Of a stretch of 64,000 nucleotides of DNA, positions 3,451 to 59,716 are shown in pieces. The stretch is from positions 13,950,001 to 14,014,000 of the forward strand of contig OZ281496.1 in NCBI GenBank assembly GCA_965637545.1, written 5' to 3'. This stretch comes from Phallusia mammillata (taxonomy: Eukaryota). The notes beneath the pieces were generated by a model, which was given only the letters and a program-made list of their open reading frames with translations, did no database searches and was not told the DNA's origin. Positions within the stretch are counted from its first letter, which is position 1; each line of letters opens with the position of its first letter. The position numbers and the translations under genes were made by a program.

Positions 3451-5219
3451 CCAAAAGCACACTGCGGTGCGAACAAGTAAATCTCAATATTAATAACTGG
3501 CTATCAGTAGTTTCCAAACTTTTTGTAGACACGGACCCCTTTTATAAGCTTTATACGCCAGCGAACCCCAAACGTAATTTTTCGTTTCTTGCATTATATG
3601 TTAATATATTTTTGGGCGACATTTCAATCAGCCGTTACAGTCCTTAAATCACAATGAAGTGTTGTAAAAGTAGCAACAAAGAGATACATTGCAGTGTTTA
3701 TTTTTCCAGACCCAAAATTCTGATAAACAGTCTGCACTTGTATTTGGTATAAACATAAAAGTGATCTGACCAAAGTACTGAAGGAAAACTCTTAAACTCT
3801 CAACCTAGGAGCTATTCCATCTTGAAACCTCCTTGTTAATGTATTAAGTAAAATATTAATACACTTCCAGATATATATTTAACAATTTCGTAAATAACCT
3901 AACATCGCAAACTTGTGCCAGCTCCTTAAAAGTTCTACCGCACAACACAAAGTCAGCAGTCAATTAGACATAGCATCGAGCGCAAGAATGTTCGCAAATC
4001 ACTTTACTCCATATCTTTTGCACTATATAGTCTTGATACCACTGATGTGAATTATGTAACTATCTTGTTATAATTATCAAAACACCTGTACTTTGTTCCT
4101 AAAAGCTACGCCGTAGGCAACCAAGGTTCTACAGTGCCAAACCACCTGCATGCGTTTTAAGTTGTTGATGACTGTACACTGATTGCATTTTAGCATTATT
4201 CACCGTCACTATAGTGCCACTTCTACTAACAGATTTTCCTGCATGATGTCACGCATACTGCAATTTTAACTGAATTTGCTGCAGATGTTTCCGCGGGCAG
4301 CTGTCATCGGCAAGCACCCTAAGACGCGATAACCCATAAATTCGTTTTGAATTTCTTTTTACTTTTTTATTTATTTATCGTTTTGTATTTTTGTGCCTTT
4401 TTTCGAGTAATGTATTAAAACTACATATTGTTTAATATCGTCACTACGTTTTGTGCTGCACCCTTTCTTCCGGTGCCTGAAACTATCCAACAGGGTTTCT
4501 TTGGGTAGTTTCTTTTTCTGTTGAACCCCACCCTCTTTCCCTAAAATGGGTGGTTAGCTTCTAGGTCCCAACTTGTCAATAAGTGCTTGGTACCCGTTAG
4601 GTCATCATGGTACAAAGACAGGATACGCGTATCGTACAAGTAATTGTGGCTCCCCCTTCCAAAACAGACACATATTATTTCGTCTGCTTTTTTGAAAAAA
4701 ATACACAGATGATATATATGACCCAACGGTAAACTTTGAAACTTCAGTTAACAACTCATGACCTTGCATTGTTGCTTGGTGTATCACTGAGTGCTCCAAA
4801 GTATTTTTTAACTTTTAGGTAAATTTAACCCGTTCTTTACCCCAAATGTTCTTCTTTTGTGTTGAAGGCCTTTTAGGTCAGAAATGCTACACCTAAACTT
4901 TAAACACTTGTTGTGAATATAATCACGCAAACGTCCCTAACTGTGACCTTCACTTTAACGTTTTAATGTTATGCAGCTCTTTCTGGCTTTGGGATTGCTT
5001 TACTATTTTGGTTACGCTATGCTTTCTTTTAACAAGCGAAATAACTTCTAGTTTCATCAAATTCCCATGGAAATCTGGAGTGTTAATTAGCAAACTGCTC
5101 ATTCCAACTTGCGTTAAACTTTGCTTATTCAACTTGCGTTATCTCAATAAATTGAGACTTTTTTTCACAAATGTCGGATAAAATGTATTTGCTTGTAGGA
5201 TCAAAATATGACAACACTT

Positions 5220-7550
5220 TTTCACAAACAAAATGCATTGAAATGTCCATTCATGGTAATCTTCACGCAACTTTTGTTGTAGTGTAGACGATGAGATTTC
5301 TTAATAATGTGCGCCGACATGTGCCTTTAAAACTACTCTTTAACTGTATGGATCAACATGTGTCTTTTCAGAACTCCTCTTCGGGCAAAGCTTTTTGCAC
5401 AAACATCGCATCGATGAGGTTTCTCTCCGGTGTGCGTCAACATGTGTGATTTCAAATGCCCACCTCTTGCAAAGTTTTTTTCACAAACTTTACATCGGTG
5501 AGGTTTCTCATTAATGTGTAGTAACATGTGTCTTTTTAAATCTCCAGCTTGGGCAAATCTTTTTTTACAAATTAGACATAGATGAGGTTTTTCTTTGGTA
5601 TGTGTCAACATATGTCTTTTCAAACCTCCACCTTTGGCAAATCCTTTTTTACAAATAAGACATAGATGAGGTTTCTCTCTGGTGTGTGCGTGTGTCAACA
5701 TGTGTGTTTTTAAATTTCCACCTTGGACAAAGCTTTTTTCACAAAGTTCACATCGATAAGGTTTTTCATTGGTGTGTGTCAACATATGTATCTTTAAATG
5801 ACTACCTTCACCAAATCGTTTTTCACAAACGTCACATCGATAAGGTTTTTCGTTGGTATGTGTCATCATGTGTCTTTTCAAATGTGAACCCAAAGCAAAT
5901 CTTTTCTGACAAATATGACATTGATGGGGTTTCTCCTTAGTATGTGTCAACATGTGTCTTTTTAAATGTCCACTTTGGATAAATCTTTTCTCACAAACAT
6001 GACATTGATGGGGTTTCTCTTTAGTATGTGTCAACATGTGTCTTTTCAAATGTCCACTTCGGCTAAAACTTTTTTCACAAACATCGCATCGATAAGTTTT
6101 CTTCCCAGTATTATAATTTGACTTCTGTGTTTCCAAATGTCCATCTTTATTAAACTTTTTTCTGCTAGTTTGTTGGATTTTCATCTTATTAGTTAAACAA
6201 CTAAATATTGAAATCTAATGTTTAAAACAAGATAACAGTTTACTCTCTCGTCAAAATAATTTACCCAGTGTTTCCACTGCCCACAACACAATCGTCCTTA
6301 TAGCACCAAACATGGTGATAAAAAGTGTAGTTTAGTATAGAGGGGACAACTTATATCCATTAGAACGCTTTAACCAGTGAAATCTCCATCTAAGCACCAA
6401 GATATTGGCAACAATGTGGACGGCACGCTGTCTACATACTGTCTTTGCCTCACTAAAACAGCAAGAATCGTATTCACGGTAGAGTTGCAAAGCAAAACCC
6501 GGACTTACTTTAATGGGTAGACTTTCTACGTGCGTGTACCACAAGCCGACGAGCATTACGCATGATCTACAGTTAACATTTTAAACCCTCTCTATCTCAA
6601 AAGATATAACTGTGCTAAACACACTAAGAGGGCAGGCAATCCGTTTGACAATAGACTAGGTTGAACGGCTACCCTATTTTGATGTGAGACAGTTTATCTA
6701 AACAGATCCAGGCGGTGGGACTTCGATGCTGTCGCACACAGAAAAAAATGCGACAAGGGGCGTAGTATATGCTATACCGTTCGGTGAGTGCGACGAATTC
6801 ACACTACCGGAACGGTTAAATAGGCGCAGCAGAGAGCACGAAAGGAATTAATGCTCAGAAGTAATTTACATTTCTCCTATTTGGCAATCAACCGTCCCGT
6901 TACATCGTCGCACTCACCGACAGCATCCGTAGGTTTTTGAAATAGCACATTAAAAAATAGACGTATAGCAATAAAAAGTCTGTTTAACATTTATGTTGCT
7001 GTCCTGCAAGTGGAAATTTCTTGCTTGTGATGATACTAAGCTTGTTTCGCCAACACTGTAACAGCAAAAAAAACTATCGTGCTACTCTGTATCAACTGCT
7101 GCATTTAGTTCCCCTCGATGTTTCAACGCCACTGCTGATGTCGTGAAAATGTTGCTAATGCTACTGACCGCTAAAGCATCAGTCATATTCCTTAAAGGCT
7201 TAAATGATGTAATAAAAAGTCCGGTGCAGAAACTGGTGATGCGAAAACAAAAAAACATCTCTTTAGCATCCATTTTTTTCTCCTATACAGTGGTGCAAGA
7301 CAACTGATAAGATGACAAAAATGCGATTGTTTGCTCGTCGCAGAGCAAAAAGATTTAGAGTGGGTATCAACGAATTAGTAAAAAGGTAGATCAAACACAT
7401 AACGTTGCAGGCAAACATCCCCTGCAGGATGTAACACTCCACATGCCTGCCGCACATTTCTCGCTAGTTTGGTTTTCCCTTTCATGTTTGCGTCGGTAAG
7501 TTGTTTGCCATTTAATACTGATATTTTTGAAACGTTTTAAAACAATCGGT
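5220..7550. repeat. Segmental paralog of about 58510-60825 (ZNF gene plus 3' UTR and about 1.3 kb of upstream DNA)
   Basis: Collinear shared blocks, e.g. TTAGTTAAACAACTAAA, GACGAATTCACACTA, AATCAACCGTCCCG, ATGTTGCTGTCCTGC.AGTGGAAAT, AAAAGATTTAGA, TTAATACTGAT. Confidence 0.85.
5333..6184 (-). CDS. Tandem C2H2 zinc-finger protein A (9 fingers, 283 aa, single coding exon)
   Basis: Nine CxxC-x12-HxxxH units with TKEKP/TNEKP linkers, an ATG start and an open frame. Confidence 0.9.
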   Translation of the reverse strand: MKIQQTSRKKFNKDGHLETQKSNYNTGKKTYRCDVCEKSFSRSGHLKRHMLTHTKEKPHQCHVCEKRFIQSGHLKRHMLTHTKEKPHQCHICQKRFALGSHLKRHMMTHTNEKPYRCDVCEKRFGEGSHLKIHMLTHTNEKPYRCELCEKSFVQGGNLKTHMLTHAHTREKPHLCLICKKGFAKGGGLKRHMLTHTKEKPHLCLICKKRFAQAGDLKRHMLLHINEKPHRCKVCEKNFARGGHLKSHMLTHTGEKPHRCDVCAKSFARRGVLKRHMLIHTVKE

Positions 7551-46931: not shown

Positions 46932-49900
46932 GTTTTCTTAATTAACAATATTTATTTAGTATTTAACGGCCTAAAATGGATTGCGTCCAATTTAAAAAAC
47001 AAACAAACAGTAAACCAATACCAAACAAGTATAAATACATCTACAAGTAGCTTGTACCTCAACAAGCTTTCTAAAAACTTACAATCTATCAAAAGCAATA
47101 AAGAACAACTAAGTACATGTAACAAATATTCTGTGATGCTCGTTTCTATTCCTGCCTGCAAGAGGTACATACATAGTTTAACACAAAAGCACAAGTCTAG
47201 CTACAAAGCACGCTTTAAAATTCTGCCTACTGCCATTGCAAGCGCCTCGTGTCGCACTCGCACCGCATTGTCAGGTTTTCGCCTTTGTCTTTTTTGTTGT
47301 TGACCAATCACAGCGCAGCATTGAAGGCGCCAACCAGTTTTTTGAGTAAAACTGCGTCGCCCAAAGGGAGGCTATGCTGCTAAGTGATTGATCGACGTGT
47401 CAGTATCACACAATGGTGGGATTCCATTAGCACAGCGGGGATCGTCCGTTAAAAGCCGATTCTAACTCCTGCTTATTAAATATTGGGCTGGTAATAACAT
47501 TCTGGCAAAACACATCAAAGCTTTTAGACCGAAAAGCAGGCCATAGCGCACAAGTGCTGTCTTTGAAAACATTTGTTTTTATGTAGGCTAGGCGTATACG
47601 CTACCCTTTATTTATGTTTCACATTTTTAAATTCACCCTTCCAAAGTTTCTTTTAATACAGTGTTTAGCGTTTCGCTTTTAAAATGATGTAATATCGAAA
47701 AAGGTCACAACATTAGCCTACTTTAGGCTACCATTTTTTAAACACTTTTATTGACTTCCAATTACGATTCCGTGTCCTAAAAAGAAATGCATCTTAACAC
47801 ATTGATTGCGAACCCTTAGGACCCTGCTTTAAAACAATCTACGTACTGGGTATTTTGCATGTAAAATCTAGCGAAGTCGTGGTACACATAATCGAAGAAT
47901 GGCCGGACTTGACAAATCCTAACATAAACATAGGCACCAGTTCGCCATACAACTTCGGGCATACTCGGTATATGTTTTTGTCGAGTAAGGGCCAAGTATG
48001 GAAACACCACAGGTCAACCTTGCTAACATGTACGGTCATTGTTAGGGGGAGCCGATTATTGGCCGTGAGGTAGATAAGCAGTTGATAAACGTGTGTGAAG
48101 GGCTGACGGCCGCACATAAAAGGTAGATAATTTCTGACTGGGTTGTAGCCCTTTCTTAAGTTCCCTTGTGAAGTAAACATTAGCAAGTTTCGTTTTGGCG
48201 TAAAGCTGGAGCTCAAGCCCTTCTAAAGTTAAAATATCCATGACAAAGAGCAGTTTTTGCAAGCTTTCTTCACTCCAGCTGCACCAAATAATGTAGTGTG
48301 CGCGATTTTGCGAGATTTATGCTAAGGTTAACCGCTAAACCACAAATTAAACAAATACCACCGTCCCTTGCCAAGATAAATGTCTGGTAACACTAGAAAG
48401 GAGGGTGGAAAAACTGTAAACTAAACAAAAGGAGTTTTATATATAATCCGGATAAAGGCGTTAAACTGTAGATATGTCTTTTGATTAGCTCTAGTGCAAA
48501 TCCCGCACGAAAACAGCATTCGATCACAGCAAACATCACACAGCTTAAGCACATGAACAATTTTTCAGAGTCACTTCTACCTCCTACATAAATACGACTT
48601 GGGTATCCCCGTGTCCGAATTATGCCCGGTCTTCTTATACCTATTCACGTGTTTCGTTTTATTCCAAATATAAAGAGGAAACAAACATTAAGCAAAATAA
48701 CTTTTGATAACATGCTGTTATCTAAAACGTTTGGTGTATGTATACGCATAAAAATAACCTTAACTCTCAACAAGTTCCAACGACAGTTCCTGACCAACGT
48801 TTGATTCATGGCCGTGTCTTTTCGTGCTGTTTTTGCCCAAGTAGTTTAAATTAATATACTGTCCTGGTATGTGTTAATGTGCTCTAAATCCCAAATGCTT
48901 TATTAAGAGTGAAATATCAAGACTTGTATATCTAGTTTAGGTTATAATATTTGCAAATGCAAAAGTTCCTTGAAGACTGTGCCTTCTTAGAAGATGTTTT
49001 ATTCGTCGCGCTTCTCATACGAATCCGTTCTCCGACGTTTGACAGCCGGACCGGAATATTCTGACGGCTCCGAATCTTCAAACTAAATTAAACATGGGTT
49101 GTAGATAGTTAATTTTTCAACCAAGATAGAAATGAAATGTTTTGTCTAAGCAATGTTCGTGTGGATGTGCTATAGACATAACTCTAAACGCAGGGGGCGA
49201 AGTGGTCAATATATGGGTTGATAAAAAATGTCATGGGGTCGTTGAGGTGTAGTCGTGGAATGGCTGGACGAAACATTCGAGCTTCGAGGGGCAGGATAAC
49301 TATATTTTAAGAGGTGCAAAAATGCGATTGCACCGGGCTTACAAAAAATCAGTACGCGCGACAAACTTGCAGGGCATTTAACCAAATTTTATCAAAAATA
49401 ATAAAATATTGAACCACTGAAATCAGTACATTGTTACCCAATTTGATCCCAAATGTCGTGGTGTCGCCAAGTTTAACTGGTGATAATCTTACTACTAAAC
49501 TTTACAAATATGTTTGCGCCACTGCTATGGTTTCTGGTACTGGGCTCAAAATTGGGTCTTGTTACAAAAGCTTGGGAACCAACAGTGGTTTTCAATCTTT
49601 TTCACCCGACGACCTGTTTTAGAAACCCGATGCAACTGACGACCCCCAAACATTTCCATCGTTTTTATCGCAATAAGTAGATTAAAATTTGACCATAGGC
49701 AAGGGTCAGGCAGGTAACAAAGTATTTAAAATCATTATTTTTATGTCGTTCTGTTATAATAGGCCGGGATTTAAATATCGAAACATGAAATTGGTTAAGG
49801 ATAGTTACTTTTTTATTGCTTTTCACTTAAAAGTTTTACTTTCGGATTGCAACTCACAGGTTAAAAATCATTGTTTGAGCGATGTTTCAATCGCAACACC

Positions 49901-50412
49901 AAAAGGCAGCTCCTTTTCCATAGACAACCCAGTCAGTTGATTCGATTAAATTTTGAATTTGTCGTCTATCTCTTCGGGGTCATTTTGGTAAATTCCTATT
50001 TAAAATTCATAGAGTGGTTTTGTACAAATTTCAAATAAGTCCAGTGTCGATGGATCGCAGTCAAACCCGACAGGACTCTTTATTTTAAATGATGCCGTTT
50101 CCGAACTGAAAAAAAATTTGAGAACTAACAGCCGTGTTTGGGATTGTGCATCTTTTTCGTACCTAATGTTAAATGATTCTTGGTGTACTTCTTTTCTTAG
50201 GTAGTTAGAATTTAATAACTGAACAGCAGAAATGTCACATATAGAAACATATAACAACCGCTTTTTTTATTCCTCAGAAATAGACTTGTGGTCAAGCTTA
50301 CATTTTAAAATTTTAGTTTTGGCCCAAAAATAATCCTTTATTTTTTCTAAAACATACCTGTAAAAATTTTTGAATAATTTTTAATAAAAAAAATCGCTAG
50401 GACGTTCACAAC

Positions 50413-52369
50413 ACGGAAATATTCTGCGACGCCCTTGGAAAATTGAACCGTCGCGACGCACAGTTTGAGAACCACTGGCCTATGTTGTAGATGAATTTGT
50501 GACGGATGCAGGGTGTTTTGCCGAATAAAAACCAATTCTGTTGGGCTTCGGAAAGCTAACAACAAAGGAAAACGAACTGTCGGGTGTTGTTTTGCTCGTG
50601 GGAGGTAATAAGATTGGACAATTACCTGGATGCACAGAGTATTCAGTGACATTTGAACCTTGTAGCCCTTTCTTAAGTTCCCTTGTGAAGTAAACATTAG
50701 CAAGTTTCGTTTTGGCGTAAAGCTGGAGCTCAAGCCCTTCTAAAGTTAAAATATCCACGACAAAGAGCAGTTTTTGCAAGCTTTCTTCACTCCAGCTGCA
50801 CCAAATAATGTAGTGTGCGCGATTTTGCGAGATTTATGCTAAGGTTAACCGCTAAACCACAAATTAAACAAATACCACCGTCCCTTGCCAAGATAATGTC
50901 TGGTAACACTAGAAAGGAGGGTGGAAAAACTGTAAACTAAACAAAAGGAGTTTTATATACAATCCGGATAAAGGCGTTATACTGTAGATATGTCTTTTGA
51001 TTAGCTCTAGTGCAAATCCCGCACGAAAACAGCATTCGATCACAGCAAACATCACACAGCTTAAGCACATGAACAATTTTTCAGAGTCACTTCTACCTCC
51101 TACATAAATACGACTTGGGTATCCCCGTGTCCGAATTATGCCCGGTCTTCTTATACCTATTCACGTGTTTCGTTTTATTCCAAATATAAAGAGGAAACAA
51201 ACATTAAGCAAAATAACTTTTGATAACATGCTGTTATCTAAAACGTTTGGTGTATGTATACGCATAAAAATAACCTTAACTCTCAACAAGTTCAAATGAC
51301 AGTTCCTGACCAACGTTTGATTCATGGCCGTGTCTTTTCGTGCTGTTTTTGCCCAAGTAGTTTAAATTAATATACTGTCCTGGTATGTGTTAATGTGCTC
51401 TAAACCCCAAATGCTTTATTAAGAGTGAAATATCAAGACTTGTATATCTAGTTTAGGTTATAATATTTGCAAATGCAAAAGTTCCTGGAAGACTGTGCCT
51501 TCTTAGAAGATGTTTTACTCGTCGCGCTTCTCATACGAATCCGTTCTCCGACGTTTGACAGCCGGACCGGAATATTCTGACGGCTCCGAATCTTCAAACT
51601 AAATTAAACATGGGTTGTAGATAGTTAATTTTTCAACCAAGATAGAAATGAAATGTTTTGTCTAAGCAATGTTCGTGTGGATGTGCTATAGACATAACTC
51701 TAAACGAGGGGGCGAAATGGTCATGGGGTCGTTGAGGTGTAGTCGTGGAATGGCTGGACGAAACATTCGAGCTTCGAGGGGCAGGATAACTATATTTTAA
51801 GAGGTGCAAAAATGCGATTGCACCGGGCTTCCAAAAAATCAGTACGCGCGACAAACTTGCAGGGCATTTAACCAAATTCTATCAAAAATAATAAAATATT
51901 GAACCACTGAAATCAGTACATTGTTACCCAATTTGATCCCAAATGTCGTGGTGTCGCCAAGTTTAACTGGTGATAATCTTACTACTAAACTTTACAAATA
52001 TGTTTGTGCCACTGCTATGGTTTCTGGTACTGGGCTCAAAATTGGGTCTTGTTACAAAAATTGGAGAACTAACAACCGTGTTTCGGATTGTGCATGGTTT
52101 TTCATACCTAAGGTTAAATGATCCTTGGTGTACTTTTTTTCTCAGGTAGTTAGAATTTAATAAATGAACAGCAGAAATGTCACATATAGAAACATATAAC
52201 AACTGCTTCTTTGATTCCTCAGAAATAGACTCGTGGTCAAGCTTACATTTTAAAATTTTAGTATTGGCCCATTTGGCCCAAAAATAATCCTTTATTTTTT
52301 CTAAAACATACCTGTAAAATTTTTTAACTATTTTTATAAAAAAATCGCTAGGACGTTTACAACACACGG
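50413..52369. repeat. Tandem duplication copy 2
   Basis: The junction CACAACACGG|AAATATTC fuses the end of the unit to its start through ACGG microhomology. Confidence 0.9.
50480..51160 (-). pseudogene. SDR (retinol-dehydrogenase-like) pseudogene, apparently intronless
   Basis: TGHNSDTG (degenerate TGxxxGxG, 51146-51123), [32 protein letters not shown] and WFLFGKTP, with multiple frameshifts. Confidence 0.7.
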
Positions 52370-55300
52370 TTCTTGCCAAGTAAAATGAGTTGTATTGAAC
52401 TTGTGCTTCAAATCATCCTTATAATAAACGGTTTCAATATCCTTTCACTTAAAACCATCAACACTTTCTTTTAACTAAAGTGTAATAACAAAGTTAATAA
52501 AAAACACTTAAACCAAAAATAATATTAAAATTAAAACATACCACAATCTGTTGTGGAATTTCCGAGATGTAGCTTGTTGGTAAAGTGATCGAAATATATT
52601 TTTTGAATTTCAAATGATTAGGTTCGCATTAAAGAATTGGAGTGAATTGGCCCTAAGCGACATTAAAGGTGATTAACTTTAGTTTACTGACACAAATTTT
52701 GTTTACCGTTCTGCTACGGCTTCCGTAACATAAAGTGAGTTTTGCGAAATATCAACAGTACATCCTCTAATCTTAAGTGTTGCTCCCTCGGATCCAACGA
52801 CTAAGGACGTAGTTTCGATAAACTCGTAGCCGTCCTAACAAAGCACAGCATTTTACACACAACACAGCATTTTAGCTTGGTGCACATTTAATAAATAAAT
52901 AAATAATAGTGTTCTGATCAAACATAGTGCAAACTAATTATGGCGCATGACAATCCGCACTACATGATTCAGCAAAAAAACATTGGCAAACTACTTACAC
53001 ATTTTTATGGAAATAGCGAATTACAAAAAAGTCAAAGCACACAACGGTAATTAAAATAAAAAAGTTAAAAAACTTACTCGGTGTTTCAGCAACTCCAGTT
53101 TGGGTTCAAGAATTTTCATCACATCATCAGACAGGCTACCATATTTTTCATAATTATGGCAGGCTACCAGATTAATCTTTTATATTGTACAAACAAGTCG
53201 CAAAGTGCTCACCGCCTTCGTTACCAAACAAATTTTTTCCCACATCAAAATATTTCATCTAGCAAGACATGAAGATACGATGAAGTATCAAATACATAAT
53301 TGTTGTGCAAACGTGTTGGGAGCGAGACATACACGAATGAAATTCAAACAAATTGTATATTGTAGTATTATCTTACCGAGTGCGATTGTTAAAGAATAAA
53401 GCACTTTAAAGCTAGGTTTACTAGTAAAGCCAAGTAACTGGGCGTACCATTAGACTTCACACAACAGAGCGATTACGCATCTTAAACAGTTGAGTCACGA
53501 GACCTGTATTTGAGTTTAGCAGAGTTGAAGCTCCGGTCTAATTTTGACAATTTTCTGAAACCTACGCGAACCCAAACCAAAACGCCAAGTACGACTTTCA
53601 ACTTTGGCGTACCGGGTATGGCCTTTTGTAGATGGCTGATGACAATTTGATTATACCACTATCATTTATGAAACAGTTTTGGAGATAAAGTTCATCAATG
53701 TTGTGTATGCAAGTTGCTAAATATTTCGCTCCGTCATCTTTTACTTGATTCCACTCGAGGAATAATCTTTCCATCTGAAAAGTAAATGTCCAAAAATGTT
53801 AACCTTTATATGTCAATTATGTTGGTGTTTTCAATAAACATCAAAACAAAACGAATATTCGTACAAGAAATTCAAACAAACTAAATCGTAAACGACAAAA
53901 AATCGTTTTGTAGCTCTCCCGATAAACAAAGTGCATTGAAAGTCATACTATTATATTTGGGTACTTGGCAGCATACTTATTAAAGGTTTTTGGAGAAGAA
54001 TTTTAACTTGCAAGAATATGTTGGGGCAAATCATGTCACTGGATGAGGGTACAAAGACAAAAACTTTGAAGTCTGCAAACGCAGAATTTTAAGACAAATA
54101 TTTCAGCAATGAAAGGGTTGAAACCAGCATTGCAGCACTCTAATCAGCAAACTTCTAAATATAGACTCTATTTGGACTTAGACCAAGAAGCGCAATGCAT
54201 TTACAAAAAAAACCTCACAAAATTACCGGCTTGGTCCGATTACTGATGGCCAATGACAAGGCTTTGGTCCAGGTCGGTCAATAAAGTCTATGCAAGTAGC
54301 TAAGACTTTCGATCCACCACCACTAATCGGATTGCACGCCAGCTCCAATTTGTCCATCTTTGCAGTAATTGTATGTTAACGGCTTTATTTATACAACAAA
54401 TATCAAATATTAAAGATTTTTGCCGTACAACAAATATTAAAGATTTTTGCCGTATTGAAGTTATACATTCTTAAAAGGCAGCAAATTCACGAATTAGGGA
54501 ATACTGACTATCCCAGCACAATTAATGCAAGAATTGGTAACTAATTTTTGTTAAAATCGTCTGTCTCAACCTCAAATACATCAAAGTCAGAGCAGCGGGC
54601 AAGTGATACCACAGATTTTTGTACCTGGGGAAACCCATCGTCTTAAAAATCGTTTACGGGTCACCTGTTGTTGCGACACTTTGATGATTACTGTAATGAG
54701 TGCAACAAATCTAAAGGGCCTTGCAGTGTGATAACAGCAGTTTGTGCACTGCATTGTGCCATCTATATACTAAACCGCATCTCGTTAATCTGTACTGGTC
54801 AATAGACACCATTCATCTGCTATTTTACGGATGCATCTGAGTTAACATCAGTACAAAATTTGGGACTTGATAAAAGAAAAATTGTTGTTGAAAGTTTGGT
54901 CTCACGTCATCACGAGCGGCGTCGACCGACAAGCATTTGAAGGGCCAGAGCTGTTGTTCTGTTATGTGAAAATATCCATAGGCGTGCAGCAAAAGTTCGA
55001 CTTTTCGCTGTCGGTATGGAATATATTAACAAATGAGTATCGACAATCTTATGCCGACGTTGGACATCGTAACTTGTTTTGGTTTTCTGTTTATAAGGAG
55101 CAAATCTGCCGGATTTGGTTTTAGAAACTTGTGTCAGATCCATAATCGGGGAGCTCGTGCGTTATGGTGAATTGACCGACTTTTTACTATTATCTCAGAA
55201 AAAACGATGCTTTGCAAATTGTTTATAGCCTTGGACAAGGCCATGTCCCTGGGAGTGGCCTATTTGTGTGTGCGTGTGTGGAACATGCTCTTGGTTAAGT

Positions 55301-58300
55301 ACGATAACCAAAACGGATTAAGCCCCTAATAACAGATCACTCGGAAGTTGTCTTACACCACGTGAAGCTTAGTGTTGACATGGAGGCGGTACATGCGTTT
55401 GTGGTCACAGTAGTTATATGCAGCCGTTGTTACCACCGAGTTTGACCTGAAGTATCTTATCCTGAGCATTTTGTGAAGCAATTTGGCAGGTAAAATATTT
55501 ACAACTTCTTCTTCGATGAATTAAACGATGCCCGAGATATGTGTTTTTCCGTCATGGTTTCGCACAGGTCGAGCGACTCGGCAGTGGCATACCTGTTTCA
55601 GATGTTTGTAATAAAACTGCTAAAGCTACAGTTGTAATACAGTGTTTTGTCAGCAAAAGTTAGTTTGCTAAAAGTATACCTTTTGGGGTTATCACCATTG
55701 ACTGCAATGTGTCTAAGTTCTAGTTTTACACTTGAAAATTGACTACTGGTTAAATAAAGTCTTGTCACTTGGATAAATCGAAATCAACGATGACCTAACA
55801 TCTTCACGAATTGCTGGCAGATACTACCCTATCTAATTTGGAAAATAGCTGGTAGTAAAATTAAAAGTTTTCATAAACGTTTTATTAACTAAGAGAGTTT
55901 GGGAATTTATTGATATATTATTTAAATTTTTTCTCAATTTCAATATGCTTGCTTGTTGGCAAAAATAAGCACATTTACCTAGCATAGGTGAAATGAACAG
56001 GTTTCTTATACGTTGGGTATCTGGTGCAAAACACGATTCTTACTGGATTCGGTCGTATGCTGATCGCCGAGGACAATGCAACAATGCTTTCGCGTGATGT
56101 CACAATCCCAACAAGAGCTGATCAATATTATGTATACAGTTTGCAAATGCTTCTACGTCTTGGCATTGAAGCGAACTGCTGTTCAAAGATATTTTTTGTA
56201 TCTGTAAAGCAATGGTATAATTTGAACCAATGGTAATTTGTAATATGGTCAGCATTAAAGTTTACGAACCCGTTTCAGCGCCTTCATTTGAAATTGCTGT
56301 GTTCAATAATCATGAAGCACGATTTTTACCCTACTTTGGTAAAATTTAAATTTCTGAATAAAAACTCGAAAGTTGGCCATCCGATACATTTAATGATTTC
56401 ATATACACACCATTTCAATCTACTAACACACAAAAAAAGCGAAAACACATGTGCTCATGCGAATTAGTTACGATAAAAAAGGACAAATTAGTAGAAAGCG
56501 TTCACCCAAACGGTTTTGTCCACATTTGCTTTACAACATCATGTTGTCCTATATTTACGTAAGTAGTAAAAAAAGACCAGATAAAGTACTTCCAGTAATC
56601 TGGGAATTTTACTTTCTAGCTTTGAACTTTTGTAAAACAGCTAAAATGTTTCTAAAAAACATTTTTTAACTTTCAAACTTTGGGTGAAAAACTAATGTGT
56701 TTGAATTTTTTTCTAACAGTAATTAATCATTGGTTTGGTTCTACTTGCTTACTGGATTGTTTAGGTTTGAGATTCCTTTAGCAAGATGCTGAATGTCTTC
56801 AGTTTCGATCTTACAATGGCGAAATTCCAAACTGTTTATTTTGTGTAGACAGTTGACGAAGATGTTTAGTGATCCGCGGGGCTACAAAAAGTCATAAAAA
56901 CATACAAAATTATACGGCTTGTTGTTATTTGTTATTCAAGTTTTCAAAAATGTGTTATGTAAAGCCGTAAAGCGAAACATACTCAACTCGATAATTTTGG
57001 TTGCCAACTACAATGTAGCATGGGGAAAAAACTAATTGTTATTTGGTTGACACATTTTTTCTTTCCTATGCGCTGAAAAGCTAAAGCAAAACTGTAAAAA
57101 TATTTTTTAGTTAAAGTTTACAACCATTTCTCACTTACCAGTATAGAGAGGTTGATATTTAAATCGTGAGATGTTATCGAGTGACAAATCAAATCCGTCA
57201 AACCAGTTACCTCTAAAGTCGACAAAAATGTTTTTTCGTAGCAACCACTAGCTGAAAATTTTGGATTAACTCTAATCCGCTTGGGAATTTGATCCGCTAT
57301 TTTGACAACTTTGCCAACTTCCACGTTAAGATGAGCTCATAAGCAGCAGAGCATTCAATATCCAGAACGGATATCTGAACCATATGCCTTCGATATAATA
57401 ACCGCAGACGTAAACATACATTGATAACATCATTATAAGCTTCAGGAACGGGATTAAAAAGCAGACTTTCAATGCAAGAAATCTTCACATATATGGGTGT
57501 CGTCAAAAGGAGGGATTTCCGCGAATCGCTGAATTTGCCCTTGACGTTCTTTCGCTATTCGTGAGCACTTGCCCGTGTGAGCAAGCATCATCTTTTCTGG
57601 TTAACGTGAAACTGATCTTAGAGTTTGCCGTTAGGAAACAAAGTCACTAGAATTGTCGATGGAAAGCAACAACAAAAGAGCCATTAAATTTCGTTTACTT
57701 CTCTTTTCTGTTTCGTCTTTCGTTTATTACACTTAATGTCATTTTTGTGGGTTGCAAATCTGTATCATATTGGGGTTCGACGAAAGCTTGCAGAAAGTCG
57801 TGTGGGTTTGGCATATTAAAAAAGGTAAGGAACCACTGCTCTATGGTAACCTGAAACATAACAAACCATGAGTCAATCAGAGATACAGAAGTTACGATAA
57901 CCACAATAACCAAAACATTTTTTAACGTAATTTATTAACTTCAGAACTTGGGAAATATTTTGACAAGTGATATGCGGTAGGGTAACAAAACGAAATCCAG
58001 AACCACCCTACATGGAAAAATCTTCTGTCCAATCTATCCTACTGTTGTCGTGCAATGTTGAAGTTAAAAGAGAAAATGACACCAACAGTCCATAGTCGAC
58101 CATAAACAACTAAAATGTTGACCAAAGTTTATCAAACGATAGACAACACGACAAGAAATGTAGAAGTATGACGTAGGTATAAACTTATCTCGTCTTCGTG
58201 TCGGTGAAACTGCTCTTAGTGCTAGTCTCTGAGTCAGCGTCTCGGTTACGTTAGCAAAGCGAATGTATATTCAAATGACAACGTGTTGTTTTAAATCTTG
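51515..58300 (-). pseudogene. Decayed NLR-like multi-exon gene: possible NACHT-associated region, RI-like LRR exons, ZU5 and UPA-like domain
   Basis: LRR exons at about 56880-56753, 56201-56044, 53774-53613 and 53258-53078. ZU5 exons at 52834-52707 and about 52676-52545, then an exon with SVDGFK*KDI...FNTTHFTW. Terminal exon 51598-51515 reads FEDSEPSEYSGPAVKRRRTDSYEKRDE*. Confidence 0.7.
57740..57838 (-). mobile_element. hAT-type MITE end
   Basis: The minus strand reads CAGTGGTTCCTTACCTTTTTT...GAACCCC. The partner end was not found. Confidence 0.5.
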
Positions 58301-58609
58301 ACAAAAGTCAAAAACAAATCATTATGTACATGAACAGTTTGTGAAGACATAACAACACCTATTTTATTTCATGGGATATACAAGATAATACGTAGCTGGC
58401 AGTATTTCTGGCCAAAATATTTTACCCAAGGAACAGTGATAAGGTTCTCTCTGTCAAACATGTTTGCCACTAAACATTCATTATATGTCTTTTTAATGTT
58501 TTACTAATTATTTACAAATATTGCATTAATGAGAATTCAGAAGTAATGTTGACACAGTTTTCTTTAGTGTGATGAGATTTCGGAATAATGTGCGTCGACA
58601 TCGGGCTTT

Positions 58610-59716
58610 TTAAAACTTCTCTTCAACTGCGTGGATCAACTTGTGTCTTTTCAGAACTCCACTACGAGCAAAGCTTTTTGCACAAACGTCACATCGATGA
58701 GGTTTCTCTCTGGTGGGTGCGTGTGTCAACATGTGTGCTTTCAAATTTCCACTTTGTGCAAACCTTTTTTCACAAACTTCACATTGATGAGGTTTCTCAT
58801 TGGTGTGTATCAACATGTGTGATTTCAAATATCCGCCTCGTGCAAAGCTTTTTTCACAAACTTCACATCGATGAGGTTTCTCATTGGTGTGTATCAACAT
58901 GTGTCTTTTCAAATCTTCACCTTGGGAAAATATTTTTTTACAAACAAGACAGAGATGACGTTTCTCTTCGGTGTGTCTTAACATGTGTCTTTTCAAATTT
59001 CCACTTTGGGTAAATCTTTTTTCACAAACACTGCATCGATGAGGTTTTTCATTGGTGTGTACCGACATGTGTTTTTTTAAAGTTTCTCGATGGCGAAATC
59101 TTTTTTCACAAACATCACAACGATAAGGTTTTTCGTTGCCGTGTGTCATCATGTGCCTTTTCAAAATTCTTCCTTCGCGAAATTATTTTTCACAAACAGT
59201 ACAACGATGAGATTTTTCGTTGGTGTGTGTCAACATATGTATCTTCAAATGACTACCTTGAGCAAATCTTTTTTCACAAACATCACATCGATAAGGTTTT
59301 TCGTTGGTATGTGTCATCATGTGTCTTTTTAAATGTGAACCCAAAGCAAATTTTGCTTCACAAGTACGACATTGATGGGGCTTCTCCTTAGTATGTGTCA
59401 ACATGTGTCTTTTTAAATGTCCACTTTGACCAAATTTTTTCTCACAAACATCACATCGATGAGTTTTCTTTTCAATATTAAGATTTGACTTCTGTGTTTC
59501 CAAATGTTTATCATTACTATTCTTCTTTTCACAAACATCCAAAGTGTGGGCGCAAAGGTGATTTTTGAAAGCATTTTTGGTTGCAAAGCATCTTTTACAA
59601 AATTCGCATTGGTAATCACTTTCTTTTTTGCTAGTTTGTTGTTGGTTGGAAGATAGTTGAAACGCATTTTCCTTTTGCGAAGATGATTGCTCAGATTCCG
59701 AATCCAGGGTTTTCAT
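58610..59716 (-). pseudogene. Tandem C2H2 zinc-finger gene C (11 fingers) with one in-frame TAA; paralog of gene A
   Basis: The two ORF-track pieces are in the same frame. CEK*FREGRILKRH has TAA at 59185-59183. Confidence 0.85.

What the first reader, a model, noticed from the sequence alone, without database searches (positions are those of the whole stretch)
51515..58300. Hidden NLR-like immune gene with LRR + ZU5-UPA (FIIND/PIDD-like) architecture, largely missed by the ORF track
Short minus-strand exons bounded by AG/GT translate to ribonuclease-inhibitor-type LRR pairs. Examples are MERLFLEWNQVKDDGAKYLATCIHNIDELYLQNCFINDSGIIKLSSAIYKRPYP (intact, 162 nt) and IQKISLNSSSLQCQDVEAFANCIHNIDQLLL..CDIT..IVALSSAISIRPNP (158 nt, two frameshifts). 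They are followed by a ZU5 domain (VVGSEGATLKIRGCTVDI, FTPIL*CEPNHLKFKKYISITLP) and beta-rich exons. Decayed text at 57.1-58.4 kb is suggestive of NACHT-associated helical domains. LRR followed by ZU5-UPA is the layout of NLRP1 (FIIND) and PIDD1, but here the gene ends in a short KRRR-containing tail instead of a CARD or death domain. That may define a lineage-specific autoproteolytic sensor family (inference). This copy carries stops and frameshifts.
Basis: partly seen in the sequence, partly recalled or inferred. Interest (0 to 1): 0.75.

Follow-up and report, generated by a model that had tools for sequence, protein, structure and literature searches.

The report
Dead copy of LRR-ZU5 immune-type gene
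This stretch is a broken, non-functional copy of a sea-squirt-type gene family that joins the rear half of an NLR immune sensor and its leucine-rich repeats to a ZU5 module of the kind that cuts itself in NLRP1, CARD8 and PIDD1. The family is unusual, but this copy is a pseudogene.

Summary
They are real exon remnants, not chance.

The locus is a pseudogene:
- It is cut off at its 5' end at 57303.
- Four exons carry frameshifts and two ZU5 exons carry nonsense codons.
- About 1 kb holding the last two coding exons is deleted.
- The 3' part is partly duplicated in tandem at 48.1-50.4 kb.

Eight other loci in the same genome share the exon order: helical NOD-module exon, RI-type LRR exons, three ZU5 exons, then two unassigned exons.
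- Copies on contigs 5, 2 and 7 also have a NACHT P-loop exon.
- The six contig-3 copies, this one included, do not.
- dN/dS among the better-preserved copies is 0.24-0.43.

The ZU5 call is supported: 8 of 8 paralog exons hit Pfam ZU5, and their profile finds the ZO-1, ankyrin and UNC5B ZU5 domains. The ZU5 ends in a conserved His-Phe-Thr (His-Phe-Ser in one paralog), where PIDD1, NLRP1 and CARD8 cleave themselves.

- A UPA domain could not be shown.
- The KRRR "tail" is not coding.
- 57.3-58.3 kb is dispersed repeat.

No RNA support was found. Earlier notes of this scan described intact members of the same family elsewhere in this genome.

The parts
57121..57303 (-). Remnant (last 61 aa) of the helical NOD-module exon (HD1-WH-HD2 region). 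The gene is cut off upstream of 57303.
   Evidence: tblastn shows 88.5% identity to aa 234-294 of the contig-3 2.53 Mb paralog exon. Nothing upstream aligns, and 57304-58560 is dispersed repeat.
56747..56878 (-). First LRR ('cap') exon, open frame
   Evidence: 48-59% identity to the same exon in four paralogs
56044..56201 (-). LRR-pair exon with two frameshifts
   Evidence: Its pieces lie in three frames
54226..54357 (-). LRR-pair exon, frameshifted after about 27 aa
   Evidence: Only aa 1-27 align to the intact LRR unit; the rest is out of frame compared with the paralog exon
53613..53774 (-). Intact LRR-pair exon: 162 nt, ag/gt, phase 0
   Evidence: Pfam LRR_6 at 22.6 bits against a cut-off of 23.4; more than 150 related exons in the genome; splice sites seen
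53078..53258 (-). Last LRR exon, broken by a 13-nt insertion that brings a stop. Its gtaagt donor is kept.
   Evidence: Nucleotide alignment to the 17.08 Mb copy; the donor is conserved in all copies examined
52709..52834 (-). ZU5 exon 1 with a 28-nt deletion (frameshift)
   Evidence: Alignment to the 17.08 Mb copy; exon family alignment A1
52539..52652 (-). ZU5 exon 2 with a nonsense codon (AAA to TAA)
   Evidence: Codon comparison. The same exon in 8 of 8 paralogs hits Pfam ZU5, and its profile hits the ZO-1, ankyrin and UNC5B ZU5 domains.
52373..52474 (-). ZU5 exon 3 with a nonsense codon (TGG to TGA). It ends in the His-Phe-Thr motif.
52107..52310 (-). First post-ZU5 exon (U1), open frame, no family assigned
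   Evidence: 94% identity to the 17.08 Mb copy; alignment A4; no PDB or Pfam match
52056..52074 (-). Junction of a deletion of about 1 kb that removed exon U2 and the family's terminal coding exon
   Evidence: blastn against the 17.08 Mb copy: its positions 4958-5990 have no counterpart here; tblastn finds neither exon in this copy
48143..50414 (-). Partial tandem duplicate of the gene's 3' part. It holds a second U1 (50162-50356, with a stop) and a truncated U2 (49908-50104, with a stop and a frameshift).
   Evidence: blastn and tblastn

Best explanation
Window 48.1-57.3 kb (minus strand) holds a dead paralog of a gene family specific to this lineage. Family members read, 5' to 3': one large exon for the helical part of an NLR NOD module (HD1, winged helix, HD2); a cap LRR exon; several 54-aa phase-0 exons each encoding two ribonuclease-inhibitor-type LRRs; a closing LRR exon; three exons that together make a ZU5 domain of about 122 aa ending in His-Phe-Thr; two exons (about 150 aa) of unassigned fold; and, in three contig-3 copies, a short terminal exon.

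Relatives on contigs 5, 2 and 7 also encode the NACHT P-loop in the large exon. The six contig-3 copies start after it.

The likely working model for live members is inferred, not shown. The LRR part senses or is held by a ligand. The ZU5 cuts its own chain between Phe and Thr/Ser, as in PIDD1, NLRP1 and CARD8. That leaves a non-covalently held C-terminal fragment, which signals when released.

The window copy cannot do any of this. It has lost its 5' end, four exons are frameshifted, two ZU5 exons have stop codons, and the last two coding exons are deleted.
For: **Same exon order and strand at eight other loci.** Amino-acid identity falls to about 45%.

**One transcription unit.**
- The last LRR exon keeps a gtaagt donor in all five copies checked.
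- ZU5 exon 1 follows a cag/tag acceptor in seven of eight paralogs and in the window. It has no Met, and the intron is only 192-905 nt.
- The exon junctions examined are phase 0.

**ZU5 identity.**
- Pfam ZU5 scores over its cut-off at the 2.53 Mb and contig-7 copies.
- 8 of 8 exon-2 sequences hit ZU5, best E 7e-5.
- The exon-2 profile's top six PDB hits are ZU5 domains of ZO-1, ankyrin-2/3 and UNC5B.

**Cleavage-type motif.**
- His-Phe-Thr closes ZU5 exon 3 in six of eight paralogs and in the window. It is His-Phe-Ser in the contig-7 copy.
- Its Phe lies 43 residues after the LPT position that aligns with the ZU5 LPH histidine.
- In CARD8 the distance from His-252 to Phe-296 is 44 residues (PMC3210808).

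**NLR origin.**
- The large exon aligns to aa 262-559 of the contig-5 NACHT exon.
- Apart from two spurious repeat-protein matches, its database hits fall in the stretch just after the NACHT domain; all four checked by Pfam are NACHT proteins.

**Past selection.** dN/dS is 0.24-0.43 in most pairs, at dS up to 1.5-2.1, and 0.61 for the close contig-5/contig-2 pair.

**Lesions in the window copy.**
Against: - No RNA support. Contigs of four probable RNA runs laid on the 12.53 Mb paralog covered only intronic repeats and no exon.
- No full-length protein relative is in the protein library, so no joined product could be scanned or folded.
- The window's own ZU5 pieces give no Pfam hit on their own.
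- UPA and FIIND profiles found nothing. The post-ZU5 exon profiles found nothing in the PDB.
- Thr replaces the usual Ser nucleophile.
- The paralog at 10.09 Mb has Gln-Phe-Ala at that place.
- The family has Thr where CARD8 and UNC5B have the conserved LPH histidine.
Confidence: 0.85

Rival explanations
1. The LRR exons and the ZU5 exons belong to two adjacent genes, for instance an operon-like pair in which the downstream gene is trans-spliced, as happens in tunicates. On this reading they are not one protein.
For: - No RNA joint was seen.
- In the contig-5 copy, 7 kb separates the last LRR exon from ZU5 exon 1.
- The ZU5 exons are far better conserved between subfamilies (51-59%) than the helical exon (21-24%).
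Against: - ZU5 exon 1 has no Met in any copy, and no Met is conserved in exon 2.
- The preceding LRR exon keeps a consensus donor that needs a downstream acceptor.
- The gap is only 192-243 nt in three copies.
- Order, strand and phase 0 are kept at all loci examined.
Confidence: 0.07
2. The window copy is still a working gene. On this reading the apparent lesions are assembly errors or are skipped by alternative splicing.
For: Three exons remain open with good splice sites (53613-53774, 56747-56878, 52107-52310).
Against: - There are at least eight independent lesions of different kinds: a 28-nt deletion, a 13-nt insertion, two nonsense codons, further frameshifts, a 1-kb deletion, a 5' truncation by repeats and a tandem duplication.
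- All three ZU5 exons are hit, so skipping cannot rescue the module.
Confidence: 0.04
3. The ZU5 likeness is superficial. On this reading the C-terminal module is an unrelated beta-rich domain, and His-Phe-Thr is only a structural motif with no cleavage.
For: - ZU5 exons 1 and 3 alone find nothing.
- Many ZU5 domains, such as those of UNC5B and ankyrin, do not cleave.
- One paralog has lost the motif.
Against: - The exon-2 matches go specifically to ZU5 domains of three different protein families, and in register.
- Pfam scores over its cut-off at two loci.
- The domain length and the motif position fit.
Confidence: 0.1

Closest known systems
NLRP1 (NACHT-LRR-FIIND-CARD)
   Same: - RI-type LRRs of NLR descent are followed by a ZU5-type module.
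- A Phe-Ser/Thr motif sits at the end of the ZU5.
- The family's contig-5, -2 and -7 members also have a NACHT domain.
   Different: - The window copy and the other contig-3 copies have no NACHT ATPase and no CARD.
- UPA is not demonstrable.
- The motif is His-Phe-Thr rather than Ser-Phe-Ser.
- No relation by descent to vertebrate NLRP1 is shown.
PIDD1 (LRR-ZU5-ZU5-UPA-Death)
   Same: - LRRs are followed by ZU5 with a His-Phe-Ser-type motif, and there is no ATPase.
- This is the closest overall layout to the contig-3 subfamily.
   Different: - PIDD1 has typical rather than RI-type LRRs, two ZU5 domains and a death domain (my own knowledge of the protein).
- Here there is one ZU5, a helical NOD-module remnant in front, and a short tail.
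CARD8 and UNC5CL (ZU5-UPA plus a death-fold domain)
   Same: - They share a self-cleaving ZU5 type.
- The spacing from the conserved ZU5 position to the cleavage Phe is 43 residues here and 44 in CARD8 (PMC3210808).
   Different: - Those proteins have no LRR or NOD-module part.
- They end in CARD or Death.
Cnidarian NACHT proteins with ZU5
   Same: NACHT is found combined with ZU5 in invertebrate NLR repertoires (PMC8260672).
   Different: - That report is only a Pfam domain co-occurrence.
- The order of domains, the cleavage motif and a NACHT-less form are not described there.
- A 2024 survey lists ascidian NLRs as NACHT-LRR or NACHT only (PMC11508797).

Membership tests
NLR (NACHT-LRR) proteins | NACHT NTPase domain with Walker A P-loop | tested here: not met
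   No P-loop motif and no tblastn match to the NACHT N-terminal half was found in the window plus 10 kb. None was found within 6.5-17 kb upstream of four contig-3 paralogs. It is present in the relatives on contigs 5 and 7 (Pfam NACHT 68 and 59 bits) and on contig 2.
NLR (NACHT-LRR) proteins | Helical NOD-module part (HD1, winged helix, HD2) after the NTPase | tested here: met
   - The paralog exon aligns to aa 262-559 of the contig-5 NACHT exon.
- Apart from two spurious repeat-protein hits, its database matches lie just after the NACHT domain, E down to 6e-15.
- Pfam NLRC4_HD2 is weak at 17 bits.
- The window keeps only the last 61 aa.
NLR (NACHT-LRR) proteins | Ribonuclease-inhibitor-type LRRs (Pfam LRR_6) | tested here: inconclusive
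   The window exon scores 22.6 bits against a cut-off of 23.4. It has more than 150 related exons in the genome, many near NACHT hits on contigs 4, 6, 2 and 1.
ZU5 domain (PF00791) | Significant match to the ZU5 profile | tested here: met
   - For the family: over the cut-off at two loci.
- 8 of 8 exon-2 sequences match, best E 7e-5, at model positions 57-86.
- PDB ZU5 domains are the top six hits.
- The window's own broken exon gives no hit alone, but it is 91% identical to a matching paralog exon.
Self-cleaving ZU5-UPA / FIIND proteins (PIDD1, UNC5CL, NLRP1, CARD8) | His/Ser-Phe-Ser tripeptide at the C-terminal end of the ZU5 | tested here: inconclusive
   His-Phe-Thr is present in six of eight paralogs and in the window. 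It is His-Phe-Ser in one and Gln-Phe-Ala in one. The position fits CARD8 spacing (PMC3210808), but the nucleophile is Thr.
Self-cleaving ZU5-UPA / FIIND proteins (PIDD1, UNC5CL, NLRP1, CARD8) | UPA domain directly after the cleavage site | tested here: inconclusive
   About 150 aa in two exons follow the ZU5. There was no Pfam UPA or FIIND match in the genome scan, which also missed every other gene. There was no PDB match and no Atlas lead. Exon-wise searches are weak, and a fold of the joined product was not made.
Self-cleaving ZU5-UPA / FIIND proteins (PIDD1, UNC5CL, NLRP1, CARD8) | C-terminal death-fold domain (CARD or Death) | tested here: not met
   None was found in the window or the contig-3 copies. 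Three of them end in a short conserved exon followed by a stop. Only the contig-7 relative has a Death-like exon, at 22.5 bits against a cut-off of 22.6, with weak TNFR1 and DR3 hits.
Self-cleaving ZU5-UPA / FIIND proteins (PIDD1, UNC5CL, NLRP1, CARD8) | Autoproteolysis actually occurs | not testable with these tools
   This needs expression of an intact paralog and a blot.

The most novel reading that the evidence does not exclude
The family of which this is a dead copy is an independent tunicate invention of an NLRP1/CARD8-style sensor. An NLR-derived LRR arm, with or without its ATPase, would be coupled to a ZU5 that cleaves itself at His-Phe|Thr. That cleavage would free a fragment of about 200 aa carrying no death-fold domain, so signalling would run through a so far unknown effector or tail motif.
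Probability: 0.25. Interest if true: 0.75.

Novelty: new variant of a known kind. Interest (0 to 1): 0.4.

Why it matters
**The window copy.** It matters only as a record of turnover in a fast-evolving immune-type gene family. It shows duplication, decay and rearrangement beside zinc-finger genes and repeats.

**The family.** This is the more interesting part.
- LRR-then-ZU5 sensors with a conserved self-cleavage-type motif exist outside vertebrates.
- They occur both with a NACHT ATPase and, apparently under selection, without one.
- Most lack the death-fold domain that normally passes the signal on.

If cleavage is real, the family offers a natural test of which parts of the NLRP1/CARD8/PIDD1 mechanism are essential. 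It would also point to an unknown downstream signalling route in tunicates.

Tried and rejected
- **Pfam on each window exon alone.** Only a near-threshold LRR_6 hit appeared, and no ZU5. Paralogs were needed.
- **PDB profile searches.** ZU5 exons 1 and 3 and the two post-ZU5 exons gave nothing meaningful.
- **Pfam FIIND and UPA genome scans.** They gave nothing anywhere, so they are uninformative.
- **ESM Atlas on exon U2.** No usable hit.
- **Whole-library HMMER search with the helical exon.** It found only distant NACHT proteins of at most 33% identity plus two spurious repeat proteins. No full-length relative was available to scan or fold.
- **RNA.** The one run search listed no holder on record as RNA. 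The one read-laying run, on the 12.53 Mb paralog, showed contigs only over intronic repeats. This is no evidence of silence.
- **Upstream NACHT exon in the contig-3 copies.** None was found.
- **KRRR tail as coding.** Rejected.
- **57.3-58.3 kb as helical-domain remnants.** Rejected; it is repeat DNA.
- **Further genome fetches.** These were for a second NACHT-ZU5 candidate on contig 5 and a 508-aa ZU5 open frame on contig 3.
Full report
**What is in the window.**
- The window is contig 3, 13,950,001-14,014,000, of a 240-Mb tunicate-type genome.
- A three-frame reading and comparison with paralogs give the following remnants, in gene order:

| Coordinates | Part | State |
|---|---|---|
| 57121-57303 | last 61 aa of a large helical exon | gene cut off upstream |
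| 56747-56878 | cap LRR exon | open |
| 56044-56201 | LRR-pair exon | two frameshifts |
| 54226-54357 | LRR-pair exon | frameshift |
| 53613-53774 | LRR-pair exon | intact, 162 nt, ag/gt |
| 53078-53258 | closing LRR exon | 13-nt insertion |
| 52709-52834 | ZU5 exon 1 | 28-nt deletion |
| 52539-52652 | ZU5 exon 2 | AAA to TAA |
| 52373-52474 | ZU5 exon 3 | TGG to TGA |
| 52107-52310 | exon U1 | open |

These rest.

**Rearrangements in this copy.**
- The closest copy lies at contig 3, 17.08 Mb, and is about 93% identical at the nucleotide level.
- Compared with it, about 1 kb holding exon U2 and the terminal coding exon is missing at 52056-52074.
- A partial tandem duplicate of the 3' part lies at 48143-50414. 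It carries a second, broken U1 and a truncated U2.
- Upstream of 57303 nothing matches any paralog. 57304-58560 is a patchwork of repeats with dozens of genomic copies.
- A C2H2 zinc-finger gene follows at 58.6-59.7 kb.
- This copy is therefore a pseudogene.

**The family.**
- The intact LRR exon has more than 150 relatives in the genome. The genome also has at least 285 NACHT candidates.
- The ZU5 exons are much rarer, at 7-10 loci.
- At eight other loci the same exons lie in the same order on one strand. Five are on contig 3, at 17.08, 2.53, 12.53, 12.73 and 10.09 Mb. The others are at contig 5 19.43 Mb, contig 2 2.2 Mb and contig 7 15.91 Mb.
- The contig 5, 2 and 7 genes carry a NACHT P-loop in the large exon.
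- In the contig-3 copies that keep it, the large exon begins at the point matching aa 262 of the contig-5 exon, just after the NTPase.
- No P-loop and no NACHT N-terminal half was found 6.5-17 kb upstream.
- Apart from two spurious repeat-protein hits, this exon's database matches lie in the stretch just after the NACHT domain, and all four checked by Pfam are NACHT proteins. It is therefore NLR-derived.

**One gene or two.** There is no RNA evidence. The case for one gene rests on anatomy:
- The closing LRR exon keeps a gtaagt donor in all five copies checked.
- ZU5 exon 1 starts after a cag/tag acceptor in seven of eight paralogs and in the window, and has no Met.
- The intron between them is 192-905 nt.
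- The exon junctions examined are phase 0.
Exons were searched singly by reference.

**Is it ZU5.**
- Pfam ZU5 passes its cut-off at the 2.53 Mb and contig-7 copies.
- Exon 2 of all eight paralogs hits ZU5 model positions 57-86, best E 7e-5.
- The exon-2 profile's top six PDB hits are the ZU5 domains of ZO-1, ankyrin-2, ankyrin-3 and UNC5B, in register.
- Exons 1 and 3 alone find nothing.

**The cleavage-type motif.**
- Exon 3 ends in His-Phe-Thr in six of eight paralogs and in the window. It is His-Phe-Ser in the contig-7 copy and Gln-Phe-Ala in the 10.09 Mb copy.
- PMC3210808 places the Ser-Phe-Ser or His-Phe-Ser cleavage site of CARD8, NLRP1 and PIDD at the C-terminal end of the ZU5-like domain.
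- That paper puts CARD8 Phe-296 44 residues after the conserved His-252. Here the Phe is 43 residues after the aligned LPT position.
- That this position equals His-252 is my inference.
- Self-cleavage is plausible but unshown. Thr replaces Ser, and the LPH histidine is Thr here.

**After the ZU5.**
- Exons U1 and U2, about 150 aa together, are conserved within the family.
- They match no UPA, FIIND or solved structure by sequence. UPA therefore remains a guess based on position and size.
- Three contig-3 copies share a short terminal exon followed by a stop. It is deleted in the window.
- The contig-7 relative has a Death-like exon at 22.5 bits against a cut-off of 22.6, with weak TNFR1 and DR3 hits. 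This suggests descent from a ZU5-UPA-Death arrangement.

**Selection.**
- Counts summed exon by exon give dN/dS of 0.24-0.37 for the ZU5 and U exons in four of five pairs, at dS up to about 2.1, and 0.61 for the close contig-5/contig-2 pair.
- The helical exon gives 0.24-0.43 among contig-3 copies, at dS about 0.2-1.5.
- The NACHT-less form therefore seems to have been kept by selection for a long time. The window copy, and perhaps the 17.08 Mb copy, are the decayed ones. The 17.08 Mb copy has a mutated acceptor and retrotransposon insertions.

**Comparison and novelty.**
- The layout is closest to PIDD1 (LRR, then ZU5, no ATPase) and to NLRP1 (NLR-type LRR, then FIIND). It matches neither, because it has one ZU5, a helical NOD remnant in front and no death fold.
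- NACHT with ZU5 is listed for cnidarians (PMC8260672).
- A 2024 survey lists ascidian NLRs as NACHT-LRR or NACHT only (PMC11508797).
- Earlier notes of this scan describe intact members elsewhere in this genome, including the 2.53 Mb copy. They reached the same reading: NACHT-less, ZU5 self-cleavage module, short tail. I treat them as leads. I checked the exon structure of the 2.53 Mb copy myself but not its expression.

**Verdict.** This is a real exon series and a correct LRR-plus-ZU5 call, but the locus is a truncated, rearranged pseudogene. The family is a new variant of the self-cleaving ZU5 sensor theme.

Noticed in passing
L044:4244-5596 and L045:1951-4154 (contig 7, 15.914-15.924 Mb, + strand): This relative has, in order on one strand: a NACHT exon (59 bits), LRR-like exons, ZU5 exons ending in a true His-Phe-Ser, and a Death-like exon (22.5 bits against a cut-off of 22.6). 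That amounts to an NLR with a PIDD-like C-terminus.
   Followed up: partly
L033/L028 against L034/L029 (contig 3, 12.53 and 12.73 Mb): These two neighbouring paralogs are a mosaic. Synonymous difference is 0.11-0.19 in the helical and closing LRR exons but 0.47-0.80 in the ZU5 and U exons. This suggests gene conversion or exchange of the 5' half.
   Followed up: no
L037:1098-1202 (contig 3, 10.09 Mb): This otherwise open paralog has Gln-Phe-Ala where the others have His-Phe-Thr. It may be a natural non-cleaving variant.
   Followed up: no
contig 5, 20,850,083-20,858,078, minus strand (coordinates only): A Pfam ZU5 hit of 27 bits lies 7 kb downstream of a NACHT hit on the same strand. This may be another NLR-ZU5 gene of a different lineage.
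   Followed up: no
window 58610-59716, minus strand: Tandem C2H2 zinc-finger open frames (Pfam zf-C2H2 and zf-H2C2_2) abut the truncated 5' end of the pseudogene. Their flanking repeats recur at several contig-3 sites.
   Followed up: partly
window 50480-50779 and 48143-48498; L030:2794-3141: An open frame that looks like a short-chain dehydrogenase by eye (a Tyr-x-x-x-Lys stretch) lies just downstream of the gene. It was copied along with it in the tandem duplication and in the 17.08 Mb copy. Pfam gave no hit at E 0.01.
   Followed up: partly
L035:2907-9999 (contig 3, 17.09 Mb): Retrotransposon open frames (reverse transcriptase, RNase H, integrase) are inserted among the upstream exons of the sister copy. 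That copy also has its closing-LRR acceptor changed from ag to at.
   Followed up: partly
whole genome: There are at least 285 NACHT candidates, in clusters on contigs 1, 2, 4, 5 and 6. This is far more than the literature surveyed here reports for ascidians.
   Followed up: no
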